Below the pieces are notes generated by a model. It did no database searches, had not been told where the DNA came from, and saw only the letters and a program-made list of their open reading frames with translations. A program made the position numbers and the translations under genes. Source: Fonticula alba ATCC 38817 (taxonomy: Eukaryota; Protista; Nucleariida). From it: a stretch of 64,000 bases of DNA. Below are positions 46,005 to 63,973 of this stretch, piece by piece; the first letter of the stretch is position 1; every line of letters begins with the position of its first letter. The DNA lies in NCBI GenBank assembly GCA_000388065.2, contig KB932203.1; one strand, 5' to 3'.

Positions 46005-46092
46005 CCAACCATAGCTCAATTGGTAGAGCATCAGACTGTAGTGGTAAAAAGCAATTATCTGAGGGTCGCTGGTTCGATTCCGGCTGGTTGGA
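46005..46092 (+). tRNA. tRNA-Tyr-GTA: tRNA-Tyr(GTA), copy 1, 15-nt intron TGGTAAAAAGCAATT
   Basis: CCAACCA/TGGTTGG acceptor stem, C1:G72 and A73, GCTC/GAGC D stem, TCAGA/TCTGA anticodon stem, CT-GTA-G loop, intron at 37/38, GGTTCGATTCC B box; 73+15 nt. Confidence 0.97.
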
Positions 46093-46099
46093 TCCAACC

Positions 46100-46504
46100 N
46101 NNNNNNNNNNNNNNNNNNNNNNNNNNNNNNNNNNNNNNNNNNNNNNNNNNNNNNNNNNNNNNNNNNNNNNNNNNNNNNNNNNNNNNNNNNNNNNNNNNNN
46201 NNNNNNNNNNNNNNNNNNNNNNNNNNNNNNNNNNNNNNNNNNNNNNNNNNNNNNNNNNNNNNNNNNNNNNNNNNNNNNNNNNNNNNNNNNNNNNNNNNNN
46301 NNNNNNNNNNNNNNNNNNNNNNNNNNNNNNNNNNNNNNNNNNNNNNNNNNNNNNNNNNNNNNNNNNNNNNNNNNNNNNNNNNNNNNNNNNNNNNNNNNNN
46401 NNNNNNNNNNNNNNNNNNNNNNNNNNNNNNNNNNNNNNNNNNNNNNNNNNNNNNNNNNNNNNNNNNNNNNNNNNNNNNNNNNNNNNNNNNNNNNNNNNNN
46501 NNNN
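46100..46504. other. Assembly gap inside the tRNA cluster
   Basis: N run immediately preceded by CCAACC, which is the first six bases of the tRNA. Confidence 1.
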
Positions 46505-46511
46505 CTGCCAG

Positions 46512-46599
46512 CCAACCATAGCTCAATTGGTAGAGCATCAGACTGTAGCGGTTGTAAGCAATTATCTGAGGGTCGCTGGTTCGATTCCGGCTGGTTGGA
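46512..46599 (+). tRNA. tRNA-Tyr-GTA: tRNA-Tyr(GTA), copy 2, intron CGGTTGTAAGCAATT
   Basis: Exons identical to copy 1; followed by CACTACTCTTTT (Pol III terminator-like T4). Confidence 0.97.
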
Positions 46600-46680
46600 C
46601 ACTACTCTTTTGCCCCCGGCGCCGTTTGCGGGCCCGCCTTTCTCTTTTCTCGTCACCTTGCATGTGGACCACATCCATAT

Positions 46681-46715
<35 letters not shown>

Positions 46716-46890
46716 GCAACACAGTCACACGTAACCTCCGATTGGTGGCGGTGCGTGTGCGCGTGCGTGTGCGTGCGCGCGTCCACGACGGCTTCCGTTT
46801 CGCAGTCCCTGCCACCTGGAGATATTTCTCCTGTCTGCGCCGTAAGCTCCAGGAGTCCTTTATGTTCTGAGAAATCAAGTGCCGGTTCAA

Positions 46891-46978
46891 CCAACCATAG
46901 CTCAATTGGTAGAGCATCAGACTGTAGCGGTTGTAAGCAATTATCTGAGGGTCGCTGGTTCGATTCCGGCTGGTTGGA
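46891..46978 (+). tRNA. tRNA-Tyr-GTA: tRNA-Tyr(GTA), copy 3, intron CGGTTGTAAGCAATT
   Basis: Identical exons; followed by TCCTTCCTTTT. Confidence 0.97.
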
Positions 46979-47269
46979 TCCTTCCTTTTGATCGTTTGGC
47001 CTGACGCATCTTTTGCACGAGGAGTCATCAAGGGGGCTGGGGGGAGGGGGTGTGAGGGAGAGGACCAGGGGGAGAGAGAGAGAGAGAGAGAGGGAGAGAG
47101 ACGCGTGCTCCTGGGGTGTGGTGTCGGGATAGAGCGTCTGTCCGACATGATATGTCTCTTTGATCTCCCCCGGGGTGTCCGCCCACCCATTTCTCTCTCC
47201 TTGCTAAAAAAAAGTTCCCCCCATCCCCTCCTACCTAGAGGCGCACCTGTTGTCGGCAAAAGGGTAGTG

Positions 47270-47357
47270 TCCAACCAGCCGGAATCGAACCAGCGACCCT
47301 CAGATAATTGCTTGTAACCGCTACAGTCTGATGCTCTACCAATTGAGCTATGGTTGG
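47270..47357 (-). tRNA. tRNA-Tyr-GTA: tRNA-Tyr(GTA), copy 4, intron CGGTTACAAGCAATT
   Basis: Reverse-complement copy with identical exons; followed on the minus strand by CACTACCCTTTT. Confidence 0.97.
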
Positions 47358-47798
47358 TTGGGAGGTCAGACACCCAAAACGTCTTAAATAGATTCAGGTG
47401 CTTGCCCAGCCGCTGGCGCGCCTCGCCTTTTTCCCTCAGGCACCTGCCAGCCTCCCCCGGCTTGGGGGCGGCGCGCCTGTCCACCCTGTTACTGAGAGCC
47501 TGACCCCTCTGCCACTCGGCGCCGGGCGAAATGAGACGCAGCGGCCACACTGTGGGGCGGGGGGGAATGGGCCGCACGGCTTCTCAGCATGGCCCCCGGG
47601 AAACCGTGGCAGCTGGCCAGACGTGAAAGCAGTGCCAAAGAGTGCCTGTCTTCCACCCTCCACTGCTGCCATCCTGAAGCACATATCCGCGGCCCTTGCG
47701 GGACTCAGGCAAGGGATGGAGGAAGGTAAGAAGGTGTCTCGTGAGGTGACTTCGAAATTCCGAAGCGACTTGAGCACCAGATGCTGGCGCTCTGCCAG

Positions 47799-47886
47799 CC
47801 AACCATAGCTCAATTGGTAGAGCATCAGACTGTAGCGGTTACAAGCAATTATCTGAGGGTCGCTGGTTCGATTCCGGCTGGTTGGA
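47799..47886 (+). tRNA. tRNA-Tyr-GTA: tRNA-Tyr(GTA), copy 5, intron CGGTTACAAGCAATT
   Basis: Identical exons; followed by CACTACCCTTTT. Confidence 0.97.
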
Positions 47887-48808: not shown

Positions 48809-50053
48809 ATGGACGACTGGGGTGCGTGGCCTGCCCATTCCTTGCGGCCTGGGCCGATGCCGGCACTCGGCAAAAGACCGAGGCCACCGTGACTGACCGT
48901 GCGAACCCCGGCTTCCTCTCCCCAGATAACGACGACTTCGAGGTGAAGCTCAACGATGCTGCCCCCGCCTTCGATGACCAGCGCGAGCTGGAGGAGGCCG
49001 CTGAGCAGCGTCGCCTCGAGGAGGAGCAGAAGGCCAAGCTCGAGGTACGCACCCCGGTCCCCGACCGAGGGCGGGTTTAGCCCTGGGCCCCGGCCGCCAC
49101 CCCTGCTGGCGCCCCCGTCGTGGCAATGGGGCGAGCGGAGGCCATGGCCATGCGATGGGCACATTCATTGACCGGAGCCCGCTTCTTATCCACCTCCCCT
49201 TCCCTGTTGGCCCAAATTGGATCGATGCAGGCCGAGGCCGCTGCCGCCCGCGCCGCCGCCCGTGCCGCCAAGGCCAACAAGCAGACCGCCAGTGCCCCGG
49301 CCCCTGCGGCCGAGCGTCGCGCTGCCCAGGTCCAGGAGCAGATTGACGCCGACTGGAACGCCGCGTCCGACCTGTTCGGTGGTGCGCCCTTCTTCTCTTG
49401 CTTGCCGCACCGACAGCATTTCCAGGCAGTCCCCTCTCCCTCTCTTCCCCCCCCCCCCCCCCGCGGAGGCCCTGTAGCTGATCCATGTCCCCCCCCCCTC
49501 TTCCCCCCCCCCCCCCCCCCGTGCATCTAGACATGAAGACCACCATCTCTGATCGGACCAAGGCCGGCATGGAGGAGCTCGCCTCCAACATTGATCGCCA
49601 GATCGCCCCGATCAAGGTCCGTCTTGCGACACACTGCCCGCCCTTCTTCGAGCGCATGTACACACCGCGGGGGGCCCCCCTCACACTGCCTGTGACATAT
49701 GTGCACGCATATGCCACCCACGCACACCCGCTCACCTGCAACTGCAGAAGCTTCGCTTCATGTATCCCGAGTTCCTTGAGCGTCTCTTCCGCAAGACCGC
49801 CTCCGAGGCCTCTGAGCACGACCTGCGCCAGCTGTCTTCCATGCTCGCGCGCATGGCCAACCAGAAGAAGGTTGACGTCCGGGCCAAGACCGCCGCCCCG
49901 AAGGCCGCCACCGCGGCCTCCAAGCTGCCGGATGTCGCCCGCCAGGACGACCGCATCGGCTCGCAGCTGATGGACTACTACGGCGGCGAGGAGGACGCCT
50001 TCGACAGCCACGACGATGAGGACGAGGCCGGCGACGACTATGACTTCATGTAA
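48809..50053 (+). CDS. EIF3J: Eukaryotic translation initiation factor 3 subunit J (Hcr1)
   Basis: Spliced product MDDWDNDDFEVKL...QEQIDADWNAASDLFG...YPEFLERLFRK...LRQLSSMLARMANQKK...DDYDFM*. The acidic N-terminal WD motif and C-terminal DFM are characteristic of eIF3j. Confidence 0.88.
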
Positions 50054-53000
50054 GTGTCTGTGCACGCCCGCCCCCTCCCCTCGGCGCGGGGCCGGTCCGC
50101 CCCAGGCCGCCCCCTTCCTCTCTCTCTCTCCCTTGTCCCTTGGAGCAGCAATTGCTCTCTTCTCTCCCTCCCCCACCCCTTTTCCTCCACCCCTTCCCTG
50201 CGTTTGGGATGCGTGTGTATGCGGAGAAGGTGCCACCCTTTTCTTGATACATTAATATACGAAATCCCCCCCTCTCTCCCCCCCCCCACGCCCCAATGAG
50301 CAAGCAGCTGGCCTCAGCTCTGCCCCCTCTCCTCCTCGAGTGGTTGGGACGTGGAAAAAGACCGCGACTCTGGCAAAAGGAGCGGGGCCAGGGAGCAGGG
50401 CGCGAGTGGTTCTCGCGGGTGGATTCCCTTGGCGAGAGGCGGGGGGTGGGGGTGGGCAGGGCCGGGCGGAGTATCTTCCTCACAGGGGGGGGAGCTCAGG
50501 AGGAGGGGGAAGGCAGAGAAGGAGAACTGGAGCGCCGCACAGCCCGCCCGGTGGATGGACAGTATGTGCCATGGGGGATCATGTGCCACATCATCTGAGA
50601 AGGAATGCAAATCACACGCCCAGGCACTCCAAGCGAGTTAAGGGCCGCGGGCTGGGGCGATTACGGCTACGGCCGGCGTTATGAGCATGCTTCACCGCGG
50701 CCCGGTGGTGGGTTGTTCTCCCTGCTCCGGAGGGAGGTCCGCCCTTCCCGGGGGGCCAAGCGACACGGTTGGGCCCGCGGCCTCGGGGGGGGGGGGGGGG
50801 GCGTCCGGCCAGGAAAAAAAAGAAAGAAAGAAAAAAGGCGCCACATGCCCCCGTCCCCGGGCTGAGGGAGGGTGTGGTCGCCTCCGGGTTCTGCACCATT
50901 GGCCTTCCTGAGAATGTACGGTCCTCCGCGGTGGGGGGAGGGGACACCGGCGGCGGGGCCGCGGCGTGGTGGAGTATTCCTCCGGCGTAACGTGCTCTCT
51001 CCCCGCCCCCGCCCCCGCTCCCTCTCTCCCGGCCGGCCGGCGTGGTGCAGTGGCAGGGGCTGCACCTTTCCTGGCAACCGGTGTCCCTGGTGTTTGCCTC
51101 CGCCCGGGGGCAGGAGCCAGGCATACTGGCGACAGCGCGGGGACTTTTCTTTTTGGACCGCGGGTCTCGAGCATTTTGCGCCTCCCGCCCGGGGGGGGGG
51201 GGGGAGCGGGAGAGCCGCGCCCGGATGCCCTTTGCTGTGCCGCAATTCGGTCCAAAGGGCGCGCGCACCGGGAACGCTGCGTCCCCCCCCCCCCCCCGGT
51301 GTCCACCCCGCCTCCGGGGGTCCATTGACACTAGCAGGGCGCTCATGCATGGGAGGCCTGAAAAATACAGGTCTCCAGGCTGCATGCCAACGAATCTCGC
51401 GGCGCTTGAGGGTGCGGTCTTCCAACCGTGCGCCACCTGGCTCGGGGAGGGCCGCGAGCCGAGGCGGGGGGGGGGGGGGGATATATTATTATCCCTGGCC
51501 CTTCGCCGGAAGGGGGTGTCGGTTGCCATCCGACCGGTCCCCGGGCTCCGGGCCCACTCGGCGCATGATGTGCGGCGACCCGAGGGCCCGGCGTTGGCTG
51601 GGCCGACAGGGTGGGGCGGGGCCGGGCGGATGGACGTGGGCATGAAGTCTGGCCTTCAGCTGACCGTGTCCGTCCTGCGTGTGTCCGTGCGTGCGCCCGT
51701 GCGAGAGGCGCGGGGGGCATTCGCGTGCGTTCGGCTGCGCTCGGGCGGCCGCACCTTTTCGGCGTGCGTGCCGCTCTGCCGCTATTCGGCGTGTGTGTCT
51801 GCTGGCTGTGCTCGGAGTGTGGTGTTTCATTTGGAGTTGGTATTTTCAAGCTCCCCATTGATCTGGCATCGGGTGAGAGGGTAATTTTGAGCGACTGCTG
51901 GGGCATTGGTTAGCCCGTCCTTCGGGCTCTTCTCGGCCCGCCCGCTGGCCTCGCTCTGCTTCTCCCTGCGGCAGGCTTTGGCTGCGCGTGTGTGTGGGGG
52001 GGGGATCTTTGACGGGGCTTCGCCACGTTATGGGGGCGGGGGGGCAGTCGCTCCGGCTCCTCCGCGCCCCGTCTGGATGGTCGGGTGGTGGCGCTCCCCC
52101 CCTCTCCCCGACCCCGCGCCTACCCCAGGACAGGTGCCCCCCGCTCCGTGGAGTGGCGTGGGGGCGGGGGGAGGCGGACGGCAAACATACGCACGCACGC
52201 ACGCGCGCGCCCCGCCCCCCTCCCCCCCCCCCCCCCGGTCCCCTTCCCCTCGAGGAATTGGCCCACGGGAGGTGTAGGGTGTTCAGGAAAAGCACGATGA
52301 CGGTGGGGCCTACCCTCTTTGTAGTTGGGCCTGCTTTGCGGGAGAAGGGGGCATTCTTGTGGCGCAAGCACGGCCCGGTGCCACTTTTGGGGCCAAGTCC
52401 TCTGTGTGCTGGCCGAGCTCGTCCCGGGCGAGCCGAGTCGGGGTGTGGCTGTTTGCTGGTGTGTCCCTGTGCTCTCCGAGAACACCCAGGCCATGGGCAC
52501 CTCTCTGCCTGGGCCTCTTTCTCCCCCTCGGCGCCCCTGGCTCCCCGGCCCCGATAGGCCTTGCTGTGTGTATGTGTGTACGTGGGGGGGGGGGGGGGGA
52601 CACGTGCAAGACGGCGCGTTCAGCAGTCGAAGGCATGCTACTCATCCGTGAAGGCCTCGGCCCGGGCCCCCCCCCCCCTCCCCCGCCGCTCCTCTTGTCC
52701 CCCACTTCCCCGCGGCATGCTCCTGACGTCGTGTCGAGTGCCCGAGGGGAGATGGAGCGGGGGGGCGGGGGGGCGGGGGGCGCATCCCTTTGGAGGTACC
52801 TATCGCGACGCCGGACCCCAGCGGGTCGCCCGAAACAGGTGGATGCTAGCGCACATGAATGCTGTGAGTGGCTGCCGGACGGCGAGTGGCCGGCCTTTTT
52901 TTCAATCCAGCAGGCAGCCATACCGGCCAGTGGTAGCACGTACTCCGGCCAATGGGCGGTTCGTCTTCCTTTCCGCCGTCTGTCTTCCCCCCGCCCGGTC

Positions 53001-53257
53001 CTTTTTGAGCCGTGGCCACCCGGGCAGGAGCCTCTGTCTCTCTCTCTCTCTCTCACACACCGTGCGTGTGTGGCGGGCAGTGGGTCTTGGATGTTGGGTC
53101 CTATGGCGGTTGCCCAGCCCCCCTCCCCTCTCCTGAGGATCTCCATATTGACAACTGAGCAACCCATTAGCAATGTCCCCTTGGCAGTCGCGCCTTTCGG
53201 GCCCGCTATCCCCCCCCACACACGCCCGCCCGAGTGGCGCCGGGCGTGTTGGCCGCC

Positions 53258-53293
53258 GGGGGGGGGGGGCGGGGGGGGGGGGGGGGGGGGGGT

Positions 53294-53337
<44 letters not shown>
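53258..53337. repeat. Near-pure poly-G tract of about 80 nt
   Basis: Read directly; comparable tracts at about 42193-42298 and 62255-62336. Confidence 0.9.
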
Positions 53338-55585
53338 CTCTCCCTCGGCCGGAGGCATGCGGCCGGGGTGCGGTTGGTGGTCTTTTTCCGTCTTTCCCTC
53401 ACGGCGCAGACCCGTCCGCACGGCCGCCCCCTCCTGCCGGGTGTCTCCCGTCCGGTCTGTTTCATATCTGCCAATCGAGAGCAAAGGCACCACGGGCGTC
53501 CGGAGGAGCCCCAGCCTCGCCGCCGGGCCGGGTCGCGCGAAGCCTTTTGGTCCTTCGGCCGAGAGCCGACCCGCCGCACGTCCAGAGCCCTGGACGGGTG
53601 CCCCCCCTCACGCTCGCGCCCCCCTCGCCGTGGCGGGCGTCCTGCCAAGCGGACATGGCACTTCCCGACTACCCTCCCTGGGGTGGACACGCCGGGCGGC
53701 CAGCTCCGGCCCGTTCGGGCCCGACCGTGCGCACCCTACCCGGGAACCGGCTTCCACGGCCGGGGCCGGGCTGAGCGGGGGTTCATTTTGGCGCCAGCGC
53801 CGCCGTCGCCGCCACAGAGAGGGGTGTGTATCGGGGCCCCGTGTGCCACCAGCCGCCCCCGCTCGGCGCACGGCCGAGAGGGCTGGGGCGCGTTTCCTGC
53901 GAAGTGCCGCCTGACAGCGACGGTTCTAGGCCCAGCCGGCGGGAGAGCGAGACGGGGGAGGGCTGTGATCTGGGCCGCGCCCTGGTCCTGCTGGGGGTCC
54001 TGCTCGGGGGTCCTGGTGTCCTGGTTCCTGGCGGTGCCGGGGGCGACTTGGGGCGGGGTGCCTCGTGCAGAGGCTCCCGCGCAAGCGCGCGCGGGCGCCC
54101 ATCCTCCCGGCGGTCGGGCCGGGGAGATGGCACACCCACCCCTCGTGCGAGTCTGGGCGTCCAGGCCCCCCGCTCTCGCCCCCGCGCCGCCCTCCCGCGA
54201 GGCGCCTCGCGGGCGATTGCCTGTCTCGCGCATCCCGGGCCAGCCCCCCCCGGTTGTCCCCCCCCCCCCCCCGCGCCGTACTGGGGGACGGTCAAGGTGC
54301 CCGGGGGTGCGCGAGACACGCGGCGTGGCGCGCCCCGGCGCCCGGATAGACCCCCCTTTTCCCCTCCCTCGGTCGGCCCTCGGCGGCCTGTTTACTAGTC
54401 ACCATTTTTGCCTCCCATGCCCCCCGGGCCGGGCATCCCCCCGCCCGGGCCCAGTGTGAGCCATTGAGTTTTCTGGGCATGCCGGGGGGGGGGCGGGGAC
54501 GCCCGGGACCGAGTTGTCGACCGGAGGCCGGACGTTCGGGCGGGCGGGCGGACGGGCGCGTGTCGCCCCGTAGTTCCGCCCCGAGCCCCGCTCGGTGGAG
54601 GGGTGGCCGGGCTGGCGGCGGGGCGAGGGGACACATCCTCCGGGCTGGGAATTTCCCCCGCCCCTCCTTGCTGTGCCGGCTCTCGCTGGCTGGCCACCTG
54701 CCGGCGCCCCTGCCGCCGTTGCCCGACGAGCCCGGCCCCTCCGTGCCCTCCTCGGCCGGTGCCCCAGTCCCACCATCGTCCGGAGGCGGAGTTGCGCGAG
54801 CCGGGCCCGTGCGGGAGATGAAACGAGTCTGTCGGGCGAGCACTCCCCCTTTTGCAGCCTTCTCAGGCCCCCCCCCCCCCCCCCCATGGGTGCACAGCAT
54901 CCGACCGCACGCCGGCCGGCGGGCGACAGAGAGAACCCCGGCACCCGCGCATGTGCCGCCCTGGGGGGGGGGGGGGGGGCGGCCTGCAAATTATGCACCC
55001 GGCACGCGGCATGCACCTCCCCAGCACACGCGCGCACACGAACACATGGCGACCGATTCACATTCACGCTCGCGCCCGGGCCCGCCCGCGGGAGGCCGCC
55101 GCAGGTGGCCTGCGTTGCCCGGCGGGGGACACTCGGCCTGGAGGCAGGCCCAGCATGGCGCGCGATCGGGAAACCCCCCCCCCCCCCCCCCCCCGGCACC
55201 CGCCTCCAGACCGGCCCCCCTGCACCGGGGATCTCGCGCCGGACCCGATCGCGTGTGGAGACCGATCTTCCCTCCGCCGCCGCGCCCCCACGCCTGGCGG
55301 CGAGGCGAGGGGCGTGTCTCACTGTCGGGGCTTTTTTTGTCGCACCCGACCACTACAGGGCCCCGCGCTGTGTCAGTTGCCTCTCTGCCGTCACTCGATC
55401 CGCGATCGGACTCCCTCCCCTGCCCTTCTACCCGCGCTTTCTACTTCCGCTTTTCTCCCCTCCCCCCCCCTTTCCGCTCTCGGGTCTGCTGCCTCTGCGA
55501 TAGCTTTCCCCAAGCTATTCCCTGCCCTCTGCCGCTCCATATGCAACGCAGCTCCCCCCTGCAATAGCAGATCTGCCCTGATACC

Positions 55586-55586
<1 letters not shown>

Positions 55587-55667
<81 letters not shown>

Positions 55668-55672
55668 CGCGC
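55587..55672. repeat. (GT)n then (GC)n microsatellite in a probable 5' intron of the LRR-paracaspase gene
   Basis: Begins with a GTGCGT donor-like hexamer, then a long GT run and a GC run. Confidence 0.9.
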
Positions 55673-55770
55673 CTCAATCCTCCTTCTCTCCTACACGCCT
55701 CAGTCAGCTGACCTATTGTCCCGTCCCCCGCTGCCCTGCTCCGCGCGCTTGTAGTTCTGAGCCTTTCTTC

Positions 55771-58700
55771 ATGGGTCATGGCGACAGCCCACACGTCCCC
55801 AAGTCGCCTCCTGGCGAGGCGGGGGAGTCGACAGCGCCTGACCGGCGGAGCCCCTCGCCGGTGGCCGTCCTCTCCAACTTCCTGGGGGATCTGGTCAACT
55901 TGACGGTCCTTGACCTGAGTGGTGCGTGTGCTTGTTCTGCATCGCATGGGCACACGCACGCGCGCACGCGCGCACGCAGGCCCATCCCATCCCGCCCATC
56001 CTCTTTCCTCCCTCGCCCTGTTCCTTTCTTCCTCTTTCCTCCCGCCTCCCTTTCTTTTCTCCCTCTCCTTTTGGCCCTCCCTTCTTCGGCCCTTCTTCTC
56101 CCTCTATCTATCTATCTGTCTGTCTGTCTGTCTCTCTCTCCCCCGCTCACTCATGACCACCGCATCCTCCGGCCATCTGCTTGTCTCGCCATCTTGTTGC
56201 AGGCGATTCTCTCGATGATTCGGCTTTCCTCCTGTTGATGGCCTCCCTTGCCGCACTCGATGGCCCGCCCCTGAAGGAGCTCTACCTCGCCGGTACGAGC
56301 ACGTGCTGCCCCCTTCCCTCCTCGTTCCCCTCCCCCCTCCCNNNNNNNNNNCCCGCCCCCACTCACCCGTGCTGCTTCCTCCTCGCCCTGTATCGCTGCC
56401 CAGATCTTGGCCTCAGTCCTCAGGGCTTTTCCAACGGCCTTCAACTTGTGTCTCGACAGTTGACCTGCCCGCCGAAATTGAGCGGCGTCCATTCCCTTTC
56501 ACTTTCTTGTGCGCATGCACCTGCCACTCTCTTCGCCTTGACGTTGGACCCCCTTGCCTCCGGCTCGCGTACTCACTCGGCCGAGATGCCACCTCCACAC
56601 CAGACAACTCCGTCGCCAGCATCCCCGCCTCACGGGCCCTTTGTTCCTTCATCGCCATGCTCCCGGAGCTGCAGCTTCTATTCCTCGAACGTGCGTCCAC
56701 ACTCTCCCTTCGCCGTCTCCTTCCGCTCTCCCCCCCGCTCCTCCTCCCCCTCCTCCTCGGACCGATGTGGCTCCCCTACCCACTGACGCCCTGTCGTCCT
56801 CGCTTGGCACTTTTAGATATGGACCTCTTCCCGTGGGCCACGGAGTTCCTGCCTCTGGTGTTGCCCCACCTGCCTCAATTGCAGGAGCTCCGTCTCGATG
56901 GTATGCACCATGCTTCCGTTCACACACGCACACGCGCCCCCCCCCCCCTCCTCCCCCCTTTTCGTCCCCCTGAATATGTTGTCCCTTCTTGATCTTGCTG
57001 ACCAGTCGATGAAATCCCCCCTCCCCCCCCCCCCGAACAAACACATCGTCATCTCCGCTCAGGCAACACCTGCACAGACATCGAGGTTGCCAGCATAGCC
57101 TACCAGCTCCATGGCAAGCCTCTCAGCCTCCTCTCTCTCCGAGGTAGTTCCCCTCCCATTTTGCCCCTTCCCTCCCCCCCTCCCCTTTCGCGTCTCCCCC
57201 TCTCTTTTCTCCTCTCTCCAGCCTCTCTAGTGCCGAGCCGACAGGGCACTTTCTTCTCTTTCCTCACTCTCCCCCCTCCTGCGCAGGCAATCCAATCTCC
57301 CTGAACCCCGATCTTGCTCCCTCCACTCCCCTGCTTGTCCAGTACCTGGACCTTTCAGGTACGTACTGTGGCAGACTACCAGGCTATGTCCCTCCCCCCT
57401 TCCCTCCCCGCCATTTCCGCTCGCTTCCATTGACCATGCTCCACGGTTTCTGCTTCCTCGCCCGCCCTCGGCATTCAGAGTCAGGTCCTCTCTCCATTGG
57501 CCACCTATCGAGCTACTTCTTCCCAGGCACCTTGGTCCACCTGAGGCTCGTCTGTGCGTCGCCATCCGATGGTCCTGGCCCCCCGCTTGTCTTTCCCACC
57601 CTGCGCAGGATCTCACCGTTTTTTTTCTTCCCTTGGATCAGCTTCGAGCCTTGTCGAGATGCCGCCTGGACTTCGGTCGCCTGGCTTCCCTGCGCTTCGG
57701 ATCCTGGAACTGTCCCATGGTGCGCTCTCTTTTCGCGTTCCCCCTCTGCTGTCTTGCGTGCGCACATATAGGCGCAGACGCAGATACACACACGCACACG
57801 CACACGCACACGCACACACACACGCACACGCACACGCACACGCACACGCACACGCACACACACACATACTCACCTCTGGAACTATCTCCAGTGCCTTTGC
57901 CCTCGATTACCACATCCCTCACGCATCTGCTCGGTCCAAATCTCCTTGTTCTGGATTTGTCATGTTCGTGGCCGATCACTCGCTTATGCCCGCTTTTTCA
58001 TGCCCGCTCCCTTGTGTTAGTATCCTGACACACACACACACACTTATCCAACAATCAGTCTGCAACCTGATCCCCGATGACCTGGCCCGATTGGCTCTCG
58101 AAAGTCGTCAACTCGGCAATCTGGCCTACCTGGACCTCTCCTGTGCGATCACCCTTTCGGTCAGCTTTCTTCCCACAGCGTGCCAGCGCCGCCTGATGCT
58201 GCCCCGTATCTGACCCTTCCCCCCTTGTTCTCAAACTACGTAACATGGCCGATGCAGCCAATCCCCTGGTCACCCTCGATGCGCTGACGACCTTCTTCCA
58301 GCTGTCCTTCACTCACCTGCGCCACTTGCTGGTGTTGTTTGTTGATGGTATGGCCCCGATGCCCATCTCCTCTTCTCTCCCTCTTCCCGCCCCTCCACCG
58401 CCATCACTCACCCGAATAACCGGTTGTCCCCCCCCCCTCCTCCCCTCTTCCTCCCCAACCAGCGCTGTCCATCCCTGCGCCGGCTGTTGTACAGGCACTC
58501 CTCTCTTCAGTCCTTCCGCCCCTGCTCTGGATTTCCTTCCAATCCGAGAGCCCCCTTTGTGCATTCCCCTCAACCGATGCGGCCGAGCCCCACATCACCT
58601 CTCTCCTTCAAACTCTCATGCTCCCGGCACACTTTGGTCGGAACCTGGCCGGCCTACTGGGCTCCGCTCTGGAAAGTCCGCTGGCCGGCCTCGCCCCATG

Positions 58701-60928
58701 GGCCACCCGCCTCGGGGCCTTCCTGGCCGATTTGCCCAGGCAGGCATCCGCCCTGGTGGGCTTCTCAATGGCAAACGAGCCCGGCAGGCTGCCCCACATC
58801 CGGCACCTGGAGATCTCCCATCCAGGCCAATTGCGTCCGATGGATCCCGGGGGGGCACCCATCATCCCCCCCAAGGCCCTTCCGGGCGCCGGGCAGCCGA
58901 CTGTCACTTCGACAACTGCCACTTCCGACAACGGCGTCAGTGGCATCACCGATGAGGTCTGCACGGGCAGCTGCAGCCGTTCCGACGAAGCACCCCCTGT
59001 CGACCTGTATGTGCCTCGATTATTTTGTTCTTCGCTCTTCCTTTTCTGCCCCCCTTCCCCCCCCCCTGTCTTTCAATTGCTCGGGTTGCCCCTGCCCCGA
59101 TCGCGCATCTCTTTCGGTTTCTTTCCCTCCCGGCGACTTACACCCCGCACACATGCGCAGGACACACAATCGCACCTCCAGCCCCCTGGCGCCGGCGCCA
59201 AGTCCAGCGCGATTCCAGCCCTGCCACCGCATGGCACAGTCGCCCTTCTCTCATCCCGGGCCGGGAGGGGGATCCCTGCGCAGCCGCAGCGTCTCGCCCT
59301 CCCCCTCGTTGTCCTTTTCTTCGTCGTCCTCCTCCTCCTCCTCCCCCAGGTCGACCCCCCCGCCGGTGGGGTCCTCCCCGGAGCCGGCGTCCGTGGAGGA
59401 GGAGGGCGATGAAGTGGGCTTCCCCTCGCCGGTGTGCATGTGGCCGGCCCTTTCGGAGACGCCCCTTCCGGCACAGGTGCCGGCCCTCTGCGCGTTGGAT
59501 GCCCAAGTCCCGGCAGCCGGCTGTGCCAAGGCCCCGGCCGCCAGGTGTGGCAGGACCCCGACTGCCGGTGATGACAGGCCTCCTTCCCCGACGACGGCGG
59601 CCATGGCCACCAGCCGATCGCCCTCGATGTTTTGCCTCCCCCCCTCGTTGGAGGAGGGGCCACCGGCGGTGCCGCCCCCCCTGCCGGGCTGTCCTCCAGC
59701 GGCGATGGGCCTGGCCCCGCGGTCGGGCCACCGAAAGCTGGGCCTCTGCATTGGCATCAATGAGTACCAGCACTTCCCGCCACTTGGCTCGGCGGCCAAT
59801 GACGCCTACCGCATTGGTCGGCGCTTTGAGGAGCTCGGCTGGTCCATCCGATATGTGATTGGCCTGGCCGGGTCATCGGGGCCCGGGGCCGGGGCCGGGG
59901 CCGGGGCCGCCAGCACCGGGGGGGCCGATGGTCCTCTGCCTCCTCGGCCGAATGCCGACTCGGGCTCTGCCACCCCGGCGGATGGTGGCTGGTCCGACAC
60001 CACCGAGCCGATCTTCGACTATTTGCCCCCGGCGGCCGAGCTGCCGGTCGATGAGTTTGGCCGGATTCGCGGCGGCCCGGTCTCCACGCGACGCCTGCGC
60101 GCGGCGCTGTCCTGCCTGAGCCGGACCATTGCCACTTCGCCCGAGCCGTGCATTGTCTTTGTCTTCATCGCGGCGCATGGCTGCATGAACAGCAATGTCA
60201 CCTATGTCCTGGGCTCGGAATGCCAATTCGACCGAGCATACCGTCTGGACCCGGCTGGCCTGATGCCGGTGGGGTTTGTGATGGGCTGCTTCCGTCACGA
60301 TGCCAGCCAGTTGACCTTTGGCTTGTCGATTCTGGACATCTGCCAGACCCCGGCCCCGGTGAGCTGGCCACCGACCGAAAGGGGGCTCAGTGGTGGGCTG
60401 CTGCAGGGGCCCGGGGCCGGCCGGGCGCGCCTCATGCGAGCCTCATGGCCACCGACGGCGCCCTCGTCCGCGGGCCGGGGGGAGGCAGCCCGGCGGCACT
60501 TTGTCCGTGAGGAGGGGAGTGTGCGCTTGGCGGCCGGGGGCCGGCCCGCCTCGCCGCCCCTGCCGGCCCAATCGTCGCCGGGTCCCTTGTCTGCCGGTAC
60601 TCGAGCCGAGGGGCTTCGCCTGTCGCAGAGCCTGGCGGCCTACTTCCAGCGCCGTTGGCCGGAGGCCGTGGCCCTGCCCCCGCAGAATATGGTTCTCTTT
60701 TACAGCTGCCTGCCGAAGGCCTTCTCGTACGAGCTATCCAAGCAAGAGCACAGCATCTTCACGGTGGTCCTGCTTGAATACCTGTTCCAGCGTCGACGGT
60801 GCATCTTCTTCGTTTTGCAGCAGGTTGCCCAGCGCGTATCATATCACTCCCGGCGTTTGTGTCACCGCCGCGCGCAAAAGCCATGCATCGTACACGCATG
60901 CTCCAACTCCTTCGAGCTGTTCCCCTAG
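55771..60928 (+). CDS. Leucine-rich-repeat protein fused to a C-terminal caspase-family (C14, paracaspase/MALT1-like) protease; about 1126 aa, 14 exons, 5' end uncertain
   Basis: Hand-spliced exons 55771-55921, 56203-56292, 56404-56508, 56604-56690, 56817-56900, 57063-57143, 57287-57358, 57479-57553, 57642-57719, 57892-57963, 58059-58142, 58258-58347, 58463-59006, 59161-60928 total 3381 nt. All introns are GT-AG and there is no internal stop. Splicing creates LRR motifs across junctions (SLSLSYNSV, ELRLDGNTC, LLSLRGNPI, LDLSFCNL, LDLSSNPL). The last exon carries LCIGINEY...NDA, FIAAHG, ILDICQ. Confidence 0.8.
59735..60925 (+). other. Peptidase C14 (caspase-hemoglobinase fold) domain
   Basis: KLGLCIGINEYQHFPPLGSAANDAYRIGRRFEELGW; catalytic His in AAHG (CAT 60176-60178); catalytic Cys in LDICQ (TGC 60341-60343); small-subunit strand NMVLFYSCLPKAFSYE...HSIFTVVLLEYL. 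Confidence 0.88.
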
Positions 60929-61739
60929 ATCAAGCGCGTGCGAGGGAGGGCCAGGCACAGGCAGCGAGGGCGAAAGGGCGAAAGAAGGCCCGACGAAGAG
61001 ATCAGCCACGCGCCAGGCCCCCTGGGGGGGCGGCTGAAGCAACCCCTGCTTCATCTGTGTGTGTCTCTTTCCTCCTCTCCCTTTCGCTCTTTCGCCCTCG
61101 CTGCCTCCCTCCCTCTCTCCCTCCCTTTTCCTTGCTCCCCCTTGTGTTTCCTTCTGTTGTGTCCTTGTCCCTTCGCCTCTTCCCTTGCCACCCTCCCCAC
61201 ACATGTGTATAGACAATCCTTTCTTCCCGCTGGCGCGTTTCTTTTCATGGTGTGATGGTGCGCAGCGTCCACAAGCACGGGGGAGGGGAGGGAGCGCAAG
61301 CAGCCAGAGCAATGGTGTTGTTGTATGTATACAGGTGTATTTAGAAGAGAGGGGGAGGGAGAGAGAAAAAAAGGCAGGTGCAGCAGAGCACTTGCAGGCC
61401 TTAGATCATCGCAACATATGCATGCGTGTGTGTACGTGTGTGTGTGTGTGTGCGCGAGCGTGGGTGGGTGCATTTGCGTGTGCGCGTGCTTGCTCCAGCA
61501 GAGGCGCGAAGGTCGCACACGGCCGCGCGCGGCGCGGACTCAGCGAGGGAGAGTATGGTAGAAGTCCAGTGCTGGCGCATGGCCGACGCACGCACACGCA
61601 CGCGCACACCGGGATGGCGCGGCGGGGAGAGGCAGCAAAGCCGGAGGGCGGAGGGACTGTCTAGGTGTGTGTCCCCCCTGCGCGCTCCTCTTTCCGGACA
61701 GGTGGCGGACAGCAGCCCGACACGGCCGGGCCCGAGCCC

Positions 61740-62253
61740 TTACTTGTTCGCGCGCCAGGTCTGGCGCTGGCCCTGCTGCGCCTCGTGGTCGCGCAGGATC
61801 GTGTCAATCATGTCCGGGGTGAGGGTGAGCTGGCCATCGGCCGCGCTCTGGGCCAGGACCTTGGCCTGGATGGAAATGCACAGCTTCGACAAGGACCGGC
61901 CGGAGAAGCCCTCCGTCTCGCGGGCAATGCGCTCCAGGTGCTCCTTGGTGATGGCGCTGTGATCGATGCGCTGGCCCTTCGGCGAGACATAGTCCGCGAT
62001 GTACTTGTGGAAGTACTGGTTGACCAGCTTCACGCGGGAGTCCAGCTCCGGCAGCAGGAAGGGCACCATCTCGTCCATGCGGTCGTGCACCGCGCTATCC
62101 AGGTGGTCCGGCTGGTTGGAGGCCAGCACAACCATGTGCTTGTCCGACGCCTCACCGGTCAGGTAGAGGAAGGAGTTCAGACTGGCGCGCAGCTCCTCGG
62201 AGATATGGGACTTGTCGCGCTTCTTCAGGAAGGCTGGGCATGACAGCATGGCA

Positions 62254-62336
<83 letters not shown>

Positions 62337-63973
62337 CAGTCCATCATGCGCGGATCCCCGCCTTGCGGAGGGCGAAGAAGCCGGCTGGGGCAGGCGCGGC
62401 CGAGCGACCGGGCGACCGAGCAGCAAGAGCATCGTGGCGCACCCTCAGCCTCGTCAATGAAAATGAGAGTCCCATTGCGCGAGGTCTTGGCCCAGTTGAA
62501 GAGGTTGTGGAGCTCCGTCACACCGGACGTCCCGAGAGGGACAATATCACCGCCCGTGATGAGGGCATACTCGAGGCCACTCTTCTGGGCCAGGCTCTTG
62601 GCGAACATGGTCTTACCGGTACCCGGGGGGCCATAGAGCAGGAGGTTACGCAGGGGGGCATTGTTGCGCTTGGCATTCATGGTCGACACGACGATGGACT
62701 CGAGGCGGGCCTGCTCCGACTGGTTGAGGACCATGTCACGCAGAACGGCCGAGGACTCCGGGCGCTTGGAAATCAACTTCCGCGCGAAGACCAGCGGCTT
62801 CTTCAGGGCATTGGTGCGAGAGGTCTCGCGCACCAGCACCGGCGCATTGATGCGCAGCATGACATACTCGCGCAGGACCTTGGCACCGAAGTAGGAGGCA
62901 AAGCCACCGGCAAACAGGAGCGACGTGGTGACAACCGCCGCGCGGATGCGGTTCGGGTCCGACAGGAAGTCGCTCAGCTCATCGGAAATGAGGGCAATCC
63001 GCTCGCGCGTCAGCAGCAGCGCCGTCTTGCGTTCCTCCTCGTGGCGCAGTCGCGCATGGGCGGCGCGGATGTCATGGTTCACGCGCTCCTGCTCGATGCG
63101 CCCCTGGGTCTCGTGCTGGATTTTGGACATCTCGGTCTCGCGGCGCATTTGCTGCTCCATCTGGGCCGTTTCGCGGCGGGCCTGCTCCTGGCGCTCGATC
63201 GAAGCCTCCTGCATTTGGAGGGTCTCCTGCTGGAGCTGCTTGCGGGCGGCGATCTCGCGCTCCTGGCGCTCGTGCGCCGCGCGGTCCTTCGTCTGCTGCC
63301 GGTGGTTGATGTGGGAGGTTTCCATCTCGATGGTCTTGCGCCGCTCCTCGTGCTCGATCTGAATGCGACGAGCCTCCAGGTCCCGCAGGCTTGCCATGGC
63401 ATCGGCGCGCTCGGCCTCAAACTGAGCCCGGCGACTGCGCTCGCGCTCCAGCGACAGGGTGATGGCATCGCGCCCGTGGGGGCTATTGTCGAGTTCCCTG
63501 TGTGTGTGAGGGGGGAGAAGGGGGGGGGGGAGGGAGGGAGGGGCAGCATGGCCGGAGGGACAAGAGTTGGGGCAGCGAGGAGGGGAATGGGGGGCGGGCA
63601 GATCAAGGTCAAGGGAGGTTAGGCAAGATGTTCTACAGCCACCGAGGGCGCATGTGGTCATTGTGGATGGGCATGCATGCATATGTGTGTGTGTGTGTAT
63701 GTATGCATGTCGATGGGTGTGCGAAACAGCCATACACCCGAGAGCGAGACGGGGGGAGGGGGTGTGTGTGGGGGGGGGGGGGAGAACGCACTTGGCAGCC
63801 TCGGCGGCACGCACGAAGGCCTGCGAATCGAACAGCTGGGTGGGGCTAATGTTGGTATTGGTGCTGGAGTTGGTCGCGGTCTCGGCCGGAGCGGCAGCCG
63901 GGGCGGCAGCCGGAGCGCTGCTGGCGTTGTTGCCGGAGGGCTTGGAGCCGCCGCCACCGAAAGCAGAAAACAT
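61740..63973 (-). CDS. ATAD3: ATPase family AAA domain-containing protein 3 (mitochondrial)
   Basis: FDSQAFVRAAEAAK/ELDNSPHGRDAITL N-terminal motif, coiled coil, TM segment, PVLVRETSR, Walker A YGPPGTGKTMFAK, ITGGDIVPLG, Walker B IFIDEAE/AFLKKR, LASNQP, HDRMDEMV, EGFSGRSLSKL. TAA at 61740-61742. Confidence 0.95.

What the first reader, a model, noticed from the sequence alone, without database searches (positions are those of the whole stretch)
55771..60928. LRR-paracaspase fusion: candidate single-chain sensor-protease
Seen in sequence: fragmentary LRR-like ORFs and a separate-looking caspase ORF join into one 3381-nt stop-free reading frame. The key link is a phase-2 GTATGT...CAG intron (59007-59160, pyrimidine-rich) that puts the LRR frame (ORF 58618) exactly into the protease frame (ORF 58424). 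Architecture: about 12 RNI-like LRRs, a Ser/Pro-rich linker, then a C14 protease. Established: animals connect LRR sensors to caspases or MALT1 through separate adaptors (NLR inflammasomes, PIDD1, CARD11-BCL10-MALT1); yeasts use metacaspases without LRRs. Inference: the LRR solenoid could directly gate the protease in immune sensing or cell-death/development signalling. I do not know a characterised eukaryotic protein with this architecture.
Basis: partly seen in the sequence, partly recalled or inferred. Interest (0 to 1): 0.92.

Follow-up and report, generated by a model that had tools for sequence, protein, structure and literature searches.

The report
LRR-paracaspase-like protease gene, Fonticula alba
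This is a real 14-exon gene of the slime-mould-like protist Fonticula alba that joins a leucine-rich-repeat binding domain to a very diverged but catalytically intact caspase-family protease; it is already in public databases as an uncharacterised protein, and similar repeat-plus-caspase fusions are known in bacteria, so it is unusual for a eukaryote but not a new principle.

Summary
Fourteen GT..AG exons (55771-60928) give a stop-free 3381-nt CDS of 1126 aa. It encodes about 13 exon-sized LRR units, a Pro/Ser-rich linker and a C-terminal Peptidase_C14 domain (Pfam E 8e-13) with an intact His/Cys dyad. The N gap lies inside intron 2 between two phase-1 exons, so it cannot shift the frame.

The window is Fonticula alba. 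The gene is already public as H696_02311 (XP_009494482.1, UniProt A0A058ZAG1), with LRR_4 and Peptidase_C14 precomputed. The public model uses a different intron-13 acceptor (59350); the RNA supports 59161.

The protease has no ortholog among 1.84 billion representative proteins. Its nearest relatives are bacterial p20-only caspase homologues. Its model matches MALT1 and Dictyostelium paracaspase best.

No RNA was seen on LRR exons 1-12, so their link to the protease rests on frame, splice logic and the public model. The sensor-protease function is inference. Bacterial LRR/WD40/TPR-fused caspase-like proteases are a published precedent. No paper found describes a eukaryotic case.

Overlapping notes of this scan cover the same stretch, and one untested note reports a possible paralogue elsewhere in the genome.

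The parts
55771..55921 (+). Exon 1: start codon, Pro/Ser-rich N-terminus, first LRR unit; ends in phase 1
   Evidence: model; identical to the public protein P0001
56203..56292 (+). Exon 2, one LRR unit, phase 1/1
56342..56351 (.). Assembly gap (10 N) inside intron 2 (56293-56403)
   Evidence: flanking exons are both phase 1
56404..56508 (+). Exon 3, one long LRR unit
   Evidence: the exon 2/3 junction aligns without a break to a solved RI-like LRR protein
56604..56690 (+). Exon 4, LRR unit
56817..56900 (+). Exon 5, LRR unit
57063..57143 (+). Exon 6, LRR unit
57287..57358 (+). Exon 7, LRR unit
57479..57553 (+). Exon 8, LRR unit
57642..57719 (+). Exon 9, LRR unit
57892..57963 (+). Exon 10, LRR unit (start of the Pfam LRR_4 match)
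58059..58142 (+). Exon 11, LRR unit (Pfam LRR_4 match)
58258..58347 (+). Exon 12, LRR unit
58463..59006 (+). Exon 13: last LRR-like units, a helical/unknown segment, and the start of the Pro/Ser linker (from about 58834)
   Evidence: RNA contigs cover 58542-58724 (X2) and 58840-59004 (X1)
59007..59160 (+). Intron 13, phase 2, GTATGT..CAG, 74% pyrimidine; seen spliced out in RNA
   Evidence: X2 record 10 joins 59006 to 59161
59161..60928 (+). Exon 14: rest of the linker (to 59701), C14 protease domain, stop codon
59161..59349 (+). 63 codons that the public model H696_02311 treats as intron (its acceptor is at 59350); exonic in the RNA contigs
   Evidence: the models differ only here; X2 record 10 runs 59161-59360, X1 record 2 runs 59219-59413
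59735..60895 (+). Peptidase_C14 (caspase-fold) domain
   Evidence: PF00656, profile positions 2-225 of 233
59855..60071 (+). Insert 1 in the protease domain (about 72 aa, Gly/Ala/Pro-rich, GGGGCC repeats); no RNA contig over 59795-60065
   Evidence: no plausible in-frame intron; pLDDT under 50
60176..60178 (+). Catalytic His codon (H877 of the 1126-aa model; H814 of P0001), motif AAHG
60341..60343 (+). Catalytic Cys codon (C932; C869 of P0001), motif LDICQ with Asp at Cys-2
60350..60682 (+). Insert 2 (about 110 aa, Arg/Gly/Pro-rich) straight after the catalytic Cys, where caspases have the inter-subunit linker; present in RNA
   Evidence: X1 contigs 60066-60619 and 60598-60965
60929..61227 (+). 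3' untranslated region, as far as RNA contigs extend
   Evidence: X1 record 7 covers 60940-61227

Best explanation
Window 55771-60928 is one protein-coding gene of Fonticula alba (public locus H696_02311). It encodes a cytosolic 1126-aa chain with three parts: an N-terminal solenoid of about 13 leucine-rich repeats (mostly one per exon, of RI-like/Skp2-like intracellular type), a disordered Pro/Ser-rich linker of about 240 aa, and a C-terminal clan-CD, family-C14 protease domain. The protease is of the p20-only paracaspase/orthocaspase type. The shown facts are the reading frame, the exon 13/14 splice in RNA, the two domain identities, the intact His/Cys dyad, and conserved Asp residues in the NDA motif and at Cys-2. 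The rest is inferred. The Asp pair predicts cleavage after Arg/Lys, as in paracaspases, metacaspases and orthocaspases, and not after Asp. The LRR domain is taken to be the binding and regulatory module: it either holds the protease inactive or brings chains together on a ligand or partner, so that the protease domains dimerise and become active, as MALT1 and initiator caspases do. The Arg-rich insert after the catalytic Cys is a candidate site of self-processing. I put about 0.85 on the single-gene architecture, about 0.6 on an active protease specific for basic residues, and about 0.3-0.35 on the specific ligand-gated immune or cell-death reading.
For: Gene model: one search gives 14 exons, all GT..AG, 3381 nt. 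One search shows the public protein is identical except at one acceptor. One search shows the annotated gene range equals 55771-60928. Splice: one search shows a contig joining 59006 to 59161. Coding signal in the LRR exons. LRR identity: E 3e-20 to solved LRR proteins; LRR_4, E 1e-7; RI and NLRP1 LRR, weak; NLRC4, Skp2, NLRP9, RI; low-confidence model. Protease: PF00656, E 8e-13; G, Y, L, NDA, HG, Y.L and D.C are invariant with bacterial homologues. One search gives hhalign 98.3%. In some searches the profile hits MALT1 at 1e-20, against 1e-6 for caspases and metacaspases. In one search the top 34 PDB fold matches are all MALT1. In one search the best Swiss-Prot model is Dictyostelium paracaspase. 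[quoted passage not shown]
Against: No RNA was seen on exons 1-12, so one transcript spanning LRR and protease is not directly shown. No ortholog exists to show that the architecture is conserved. The MALT1 affinity comes from the bacterial sequences in the profile and in the alignment behind the model, not from the Fonticula sequence alone. The model's mean pLDDT is 52.6; only the core reaches 70-90. The Cys motif is DxCQ, neither DxCR nor DxCH. Two long low-complexity inserts could impair folding. No ligand, substrate, adjacent effector gene or expression pattern is known.
Confidence: 0.6

Rival explanations
1. The protein is real and fused, but the LRR domain is only a targeting or scaffolding module. 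It would bring a housekeeping or developmental protease to a fixed partner, much as LRRs do in F-box proteins, with no role in sensing non-self or in cell death.
For: The best structural neighbours of the poor LRR model include Skp2/FBXL substrate-adaptor LRRs as well as NLR LRRs. No STAND NTPase, death-fold or TIR domain is present. No effector gene such as a gasdermin was recognised next to it. The gene is single-copy and has no orthologs, and no expanded, diversifying family was seen.
Against: Nothing distinguishes this reading from the sensor reading with the present data. The bacterial precedents for repeat-fused caspase homologues sit in defence contexts.
Confidence: 0.25
2. There are two transcription units. 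One would be an LRR-only gene (exons 1-12). The other would be a protease gene whose transcript starts in intron 12 or exon 13 and is translated from the first in-frame ATG at 58618. The fusion would then be an artefact of gene prediction.
For: RNA contigs cover only 58542-61227. None was listed for 55771-58462 (share of words 0.00-0.01). There is no in-frame ATG between the stop at about 58417 and 58618, so a 5' UTR starting near 58500 is formally possible.
Against: Contig depth falls steadily from 3' to 5' in these tiny runs (11-12 million letters), as expected for a long mRNA of low abundance. Exon 13 opens with an AG acceptor in exactly the phase left by exon 12, and it continues the LRR pattern. 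Intron 12 is only 115 nt. Exons 1-12 would have no terminal exon of their own. The public annotation makes one gene.
Confidence: 0.1
3. It is a decaying or non-catalytic lineage-specific protein. The caspase fold would be kept only as a scaffold, a pseudo-protease in function despite the dyad, and loaded with low-complexity insertions.
For: The domain is extremely diverged: only six hits at E about 1e-4 in 1.84 billion proteins. About 180 of its 409 residues are low-complexity inserts modelled as disordered. The position after the Cys is Q rather than R or H.
Against: Every column that is invariant among the nearest bacterial homologues, including His, Gly, Asp-x-Cys and NDA, is kept. The frame is open over 1126 codons. 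The gene is transcribed and spliced.
Confidence: 0.05

Closest known systems
Bacterial repeat-fused caspase homologues (orthocaspases; gasdermin-associated Peptidase_C14/CHAT proteases fused to LRR, TPR, WD40 or NACHT; Bacteroidota LRR_5 + Peptidase_C14 proteins)
   Same: A p20-type C14 protease and a repeat-type binding domain sit in one chain. The nearest sequence and fold relatives of the Fonticula protease are in this group. The proposed logic is the same: recognition coupled directly to proteolysis.
   Different: The Fonticula protein is eukaryotic, intron-rich and has no detectable ortholog. Its LRRs are N-terminal and of RI/Skp2-like type, not BspA-type LRR_5. A linker of about 240 aa separates the domains, and two long inserts lie in the protease. 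No gasdermin or other effector gene was recognised beside it.
Paracaspases (human MALT1; Dictyostelium paracaspase; 'type 2' p20-only paracaspases)
   Same: They are the best solved-structure and Swiss-Prot fold matches. The His/Cys dyad, the Asp at Cys-2 and the Asp of the N-terminal motif, which line the Arg-binding pocket in MALT1, are shared (alignment read together). No metacaspase-type p10 region was recognised.
   Different: There is no death domain and no Ig domain. The Cys motif is DxCQ, not DxCR. The sequence alone does not match MALT1 significantly. MALT1 is recruited through separate adaptors (CARD-CC and BCL10), whereas here a binding domain is built into the chain.
NLR inflammasomes and other STAND sensors that activate caspases
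   Same: An intracellular-type LRR domain is functionally linked to a caspase-fold protease. The LRR model resembles the NLRC4 and NLRP LRRs (weak).
   Different: There is no NACHT or NB-ARC NTPase, and no CARD or PYD adaptor domain. The LRR and the protease are on one chain instead of being assembled from several proteins.
Metacaspases of fungi, plants and protists
   Same: Same Pfam family and fold, and basic P1 specificity is predicted.
   Different: The DxCH(S)G motif is absent. The metacaspase matches are about 14 orders of magnitude weaker than MALT1 for the profile and about 4 orders weaker for the fold. Metacaspases carry no LRRs.

Membership tests
Peptidase family C14 (clan CD, caspase fold) | Significant match to the family profile | tested here: met
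   PF00656, E 8e-13 to 2e-13, 49-51 bits against a cut-off of 21.4, profile positions 2-225 of 233
Peptidase family C14 (clan CD, caspase fold) | Catalytic His-Gly and Cys in the conserved positions | tested here: met
   H877-G878 and C932 (1126-aa numbering) fall in the invariant HG and DxC columns shared with six bacterial homologues
Peptidase family C14 (clan CD, caspase fold) | Caspase/hemoglobinase alpha/beta fold | tested here: met
   The AF2 model has core pLDDT of 70-90. Foldseek hits to MALT1, caspase-9 and metacaspases all have probability 1.00. Caveat: the alignment is shallow and the inserts are disordered.
Paracaspase (MALT1-like) | Closer to paracaspases than to caspases or metacaspases | tested here: inconclusive
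   The profile including Fonticula hits MALT1 at 3.5e-20, against 1.5e-6 for caspase-1 and 4e-6 for metacaspase. The bacterial-only profile does the same, and the Fonticula domain alone hits nothing. Fold matches rank MALT1 and Dictyostelium paracaspase first.
Paracaspase (MALT1-like) | DxCR motif at the catalytic Cys | tested here: not met
   The motif is L-D-I-C-Q. The motif definition is from PMC5756287.
Paracaspase (MALT1-like) | Type 1 architecture: death domain plus Ig domains | tested here: not met
   Pfam finds only LRR_4 and Peptidase_C14 in the whole protein
Paracaspase (MALT1-like) | Arg-specific proteolysis activated by dimerisation | not testable with these tools
   Needs enzymology. 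Only the pocket Asp residues can be read from the sequence.
Metacaspase | DxCH motif and a p10 region with Ca-binding loop | tested here: not met
   The motif is DxCQ. The metacaspase matches cover only the p20 N-terminal part and are weak.
Caspase (animal, Asp-specific) | QACxG motif and an Arg/Gln/Arg pocket for Asp | tested here: not met
   Asp, not Gln, stands at Cys-2. Caspases are weaker matches than MALT1.
Leucine-rich repeat proteins | Tandem units ending in LxxLxL(x) | tested here: met
   The 13 exon-sized units align with a shared LxxLxL end. Their profile hits solved LRR proteins at E 3e-20. Pfam LRR_4 hits at E 1e-7.
Leucine-rich repeat proteins | Curved solenoid structure | tested here: inconclusive
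   The single-sequence AF2 model has mean pLDDT 48.5. Only residues 150-350 reach 60-77, with alternating strand and helix. Foldseek hits to NLRC4, Skp2, NLRP9 and RI have E about 1e-3.
NLR / STAND sensors | Central NACHT or NB-ARC NTPase | tested here: not met
   No NTPase family appears in Pfam for P0001 or for residues 345-660. There are no PADLOC or NCBIfam hits.
Gasdermin-associated repeat-fused caspase-like proteases | Protease and repeat domain in one chain | tested here: met
Gasdermin-associated repeat-fused caspase-like proteases | Adjacent gasdermin (substrate) gene | tested here: inconclusive
   The annotated neighbours are an eIF3 subunit and ATAD3. Long ORFs in the 5.7 kb upstream have no Pfam hit and no codon-position GC signal. 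Multi-exon genes there were not modelled, and gene clustering is not expected in a eukaryote.

The most novel reading that the evidence does not exclude
Fonticula alba, an aggregatively multicellular relative of fungi, uses a one-chain pattern-recognition protease. The LRR solenoid binds a microbial, damage or non-self ligand and directly switches on the built-in paracaspase-like domain. No NTPase or death-fold adaptor is involved. The output is cell death or signalling during feeding or sorocarp formation. This would be a eukaryotic counterpart of the bacterial repeat-fused caspase-like defence proteases, and a minimal alternative to inflammasome and CBM complexes.
Probability: 0.15. Interest if true: 0.8.

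Novelty: new variant of a known kind. Interest (0 to 1): 0.45.

Why it matters
A 2017 review states that eukaryotic p20-only caspase homologues consist of the protease domain alone, and that only prokaryotic orthocaspases carry extra domains (PMC5756287). This gene is a counter-example, and it comes from a lineage that invented aggregative multicellularity on its own. If the LRR really controls the protease, it would show that direct coupling of recognition to caspase-fold proteolysis, proposed for bacteria, also exists in a eukaryote. It would also give a simple system for studying how caspase-family enzymes are switched on without adaptors. On the practical side, the public gene model probably lacks 63 residues because of a misplaced acceptor. 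The weight of the finding is limited: it is one orphan gene, in a rarely studied organism, with no functional data.

Tried and rejected
1. Sequence searches for relatives.
- The word-indexed search with the C-terminal piece found nothing.
- With the 834-aa ORF and with the whole public protein it found only the protein itself.
- Exhaustive phmmer of the protease domain against 1.84 billion representatives gave the protein itself plus six bacterial hits at E about 1e-4.
- The metagenome scan gave no confirmed relative.

2. Direct sequence matches to solved structures. The whole protease domain and two insert-free pieces gave none.

3. PADLOC and NCBIfam gave no hits.

4. RNA support for the LRR exons.
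- The only read-laying run showed none.
- The second run search listed no holder.
- The two 2026 raw-read runs of 'organism B' matched only poly-C tracts.
- Depth at 56879-57272 in X1 and X2 comes from contigs that continue into sequence absent from the window. I treated it as low-complexity cross-matching.

5. A hidden intron in protease insert 1, where RNA contigs are missing (59795-60065). I rejected it. The only five in-frame GT..AG pairs have non-consensus donors and no pyrimidine tract, and the stretch is 52% pyrimidine against 71% for real introns.

6. A transmembrane receptor-like topology. The most hydrophobic 19-mer (Kyte-Doolittle 1.87, residues 350-372) lies within LRR-pattern sequence, contains Asp and Pro, and there is no N-terminal signal peptide. 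I rejected it, weakly. An unannotated upstream exon cannot be excluded.

7. N-myristoylation of the MGHGDS start. His at position 3 and Pro at position 7 do not fit the usual consensus as I remember it, so I make no claim.

8. Recent exon duplication. The LRR exons share no DNA-level repeats; only intronic microsatellites repeat.

9. Literature. No paper was found on Fonticula caspase homologues or on LRR-caspase fusions in eukaryotes.

Full report
**What is in the sequence.** The region is GC-rich (about 65%) eukaryotic DNA with short pyrimidine-rich introns. I picked exon ends by frame and GT..AG and obtained 14 exons:
- 55771-55921, 56203-56292, 56404-56508, 56604-56690, 56817-56900, 57063-57143, 57287-57358
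- 57479-57553, 57642-57719, 57892-57963, 58059-58142, 58258-58347, 58463-59006, 59161-60928

Exons 2-12 are all symmetric phase 1 and measure 72-105 nt. Twelve of the thirteen acceptors are CAG, and the donors read GT[AG][CT]G-like. The introns measure 88-281 nt and average 71% pyrimidine, against 58% in the exons.

**The assembly gap.** The ten N at 56342-56351 lie inside intron 2 (56293-56403), 49 nt after the donor and 52 nt before the acceptor.
- Both flanking exons are phase 1, so the frame does not depend on the true gap length.
- The exon 2/3 junction aligns without a break to a solved RI-like LRR protein.
- A hidden additional phase-1 exon cannot be ruled out from the sequence. No read evidence crosses the gap.

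**Is it more than chance?** In DNA this GC-rich, ORFs of 200-400 codons occur in all six frames, so openness alone is weak evidence. The stronger evidence is the following.
- The LRR exons have coding-type codon-position GC of 0.65/0.42/0.71. The ATAD3 ORF downstream has 0.65/0.51/0.79. The long ORFs upstream are flat at about 0.7/0.7/0.7.
- The other two frames of the LRR exons hold 11 and 5 stops.
- The 13 exon-sized units align with a common LxxLxL end. A profile built from them hits solved LRR proteins at E 3e-20.
- Pfam finds LRR_4 (E 1e-7) and Peptidase_C14 (E 4e-12) in the protein. The protease piece alone scores E 8e-13.

**RNA evidence.** Four small 2012 runs of 'organism A' hold 36-47% of the sampled words of 58200-60950. 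I laid two of them.
- X2 contains a 237-nt contig that joins 58970-59006 to 59161-59360, skipping 154 nt with GT..AG ends.
- Contigs cover 58542-58724, 58840-59004, 59161-59413, 59610-59794 and 60066-61227.
- Depth falls from 3' to 5'.
- Nothing usable lies on exons 1-12. A second run search with 55771-58462 listed no holder.
- The apparent depth at 56879-57272 comes from contigs that run on into sequence absent from the window.
- No contig covers 59795-60065, the GGGGCC-rich insert 1. I found no credible in-frame intron there.

So the exon 13/14 join is shown. The join of exons 1-12 to exon 13 rests on phase, splice consensus, continuation of the LRR pattern into exon 13, the short 115-nt intron 12, and the public annotation.

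**Identity.** The word-indexed search with the 834-aa ORF returned one protein: hypothetical protein H696_02311 of Fonticula alba, 1063 aa (KCV71359.1, XP_009494482.1, UniProt A0A058ZAG1, named 'Peptidase C14 caspase domain-containing protein'). Pfam PF00656 and PF12799 are precomputed for it. Its annotated gene range on KB932203.1 corresponds exactly to window 55771-60928.

The public protein equals my model except that it lacks 63 residues. It places the intron-13 acceptor at 59350 instead of 59161. Alternative use of both in-frame acceptors is possible.

**The protease domain.** It is very diverged.
- Exhaustive phmmer against 1.84 billion representatives gave only the protein itself below E 1e-10, plus six hits at E about 1e-4. 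All six carry Peptidase_C14; the named ones are bacterial, and two are fused to FGE-sulfatase or WD40 domains.
- Alone, the domain matches no solved structure by sequence.
- hhalign links it to the bacterial set at 98.3% probability, E 2e-14.
- In the joint alignment, the columns G, Y, L, N-D-A, H-G, Y.L and D.C are invariant. This places the catalytic His at 60176-60178 and the Cys at 60341-60343.
- The Asp of the NDA motif and the Asp at Cys-2 align with the two MALT1 Asp residues in VDV and LDMC. From my knowledge of MALT1 structures these are D365 and D462 of the Arg-binding pocket, so I infer basic P1 specificity.
- The profile hits MALT1 at 3.5e-20, caspase-1 at 1.5e-6 and metacaspase at 4e-6. 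A control profile without Fonticula does the same, so this affinity belongs to the bacterial group.
- An AF2 model from the seven-sequence alignment has a confident core (pLDDT 70-90) and disordered inserts.
- Its 34 best PDB matches are all MALT1 (E 6e-8 to 2e-5), followed by caspase-9 and metacaspases at about 1e-4 to 1e-3.
- The best Swiss-Prot model is Dictyostelium paracaspase, then the Nostoc WD-repeat protein all2124.
- The AFDB-cluster and Atlas neighbours are overwhelmingly caspase-family p20 proteins, and all listed Atlas clusters are bacterial; many carry TPR, Sel1, WD40, FGE-sulfatase or GUN4 domains.
- The Cys motif is DxCQ, which is neither the DxCR nor the DxCH used to separate paracaspases from metacaspases.

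I therefore call it a p20-only paracaspase/orthocaspase-like C14 domain, not a MALT1 ortholog.

**The LRR part and the linker.** The first units are long (28-35 aa) and weakly resemble ribonuclease inhibitor and the NLRP1 LRR. Later units are 24-26 aa. The single-sequence model is poor (mean pLDDT 48.5), and its matches (NLRC4, Skp2, NLRP9, FBXL, RI) are only suggestive of an intracellular LRR class. Residues 481-718 are 20% Pro and 16% Ser. I found no NTPase, death-fold or other domain.

**How it likely works.** The architecture puts a protein-binding solenoid and a caspase-fold protease with an intact active site on one chain, joined by a long flexible tether. By analogy with MALT1 and initiator caspases (established knowledge), the protease would need dimerisation or release of an inhibitory contact to become active. 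The LRR is the obvious module to provide either. The Arg-rich insert after the Cys sits where caspases are cut between their subunits. All of this is inference.

**Comparison with what is known.** The same logic has been proposed in print for bacterial gasdermin-associated caspase-like proteases fused to LRR, TPR, WD40 or NACHT domains. Bacteroidota have sizeable clusters of LRR_5 + Peptidase_C14 proteins. In contrast, a 2017 review says that eukaryotic p20-only homologues carry no additional domains. None of my ten literature searches found a described eukaryotic LRR-C14 protein or any paper on this Fonticula gene.

**Verdict.** The gene is already public but uncharacterised, and I class it as a new eukaryotic variant of a known kind, the repeat-fused caspase homologues. 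It is of moderate interest. Overlapping notes of this scan describe the same stretch (s1-065433, s1-065594, s1-066214, s1-065977). One note (s1-066366) reports a possible LRR plus dead-caspase paralogue elsewhere in the genome, which I could not retrieve or test.

Noticed in passing
window 46005-47886: An array of five 88-nt tRNA genes with identical Rfam scores (46005, 46512, 46891 and 47799 on +, 47270 on -), interrupted by a 404-N assembly gap (46101-46504). ARAGORN, in bacterial mode, calls two of them Thr(TGT). Read by eye, the anticodon loop looks like GTA followed by a short intron, which would make them intron-containing tRNA-Tyr genes.
   Followed up: partly
window 59161-59349: The public gene model H696_02311 treats these 189 nt (63 codons) as part of intron 13, but the RNA contigs of runs X1 and X2 are continuous through them. 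This is a probable annotation error or an alternative in-frame acceptor.
   Followed up: yes
window 50053-55770: A stretch of about 5.7 kb at 68-72% GC, between the eIF3-subunit gene and the LRR-protease gene, has no annotated gene. Long ORFs occur on both strands, but they show no codon-position GC periodicity and no Pfam hits. It may be non-coding, or it may hold unmodelled exons, including a possible upstream exon of this gene.
   Followed up: partly
window 55587-55660 and 57763-57874: A long (GT)n microsatellite lies about 110 nt upstream of the start codon, and a (CA/CACG)n microsatellite fills much of intron 9. Poly-C and C/T tracts in introns 5, 6 and 13 attract unrelated reads and contigs.
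   Followed up: no
window 59794-60066: Contigs of both RNA runs stop at exactly 59794 and resume only at 60066 or later. The hole coincides with the GGGGCC-repeat-rich insert 1 of the protease domain. The likely cause is a sequencing or assembly drop-out, but it is not proven.
   Followed up: partly
window 61740-63973 (- strand): A convergent neighbour gene encodes an ATAD3-like AAA ATPase (ATAD3_N at E 1e-39). RNA contigs at 61321-61400 are much deeper (15-64) than those of the LRR-protease gene and probably belong to its 3' end.
   Followed up: no
another piece of the same genome (scan note s1-066366): An earlier first-stage note reports a second LRR + caspase-like fusion with a dead active site in Fonticula alba. 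Neither the exhaustive phmmer search nor the word-indexed search with this protein recovered it, so if it is real it is very diverged.
   Followed up: no
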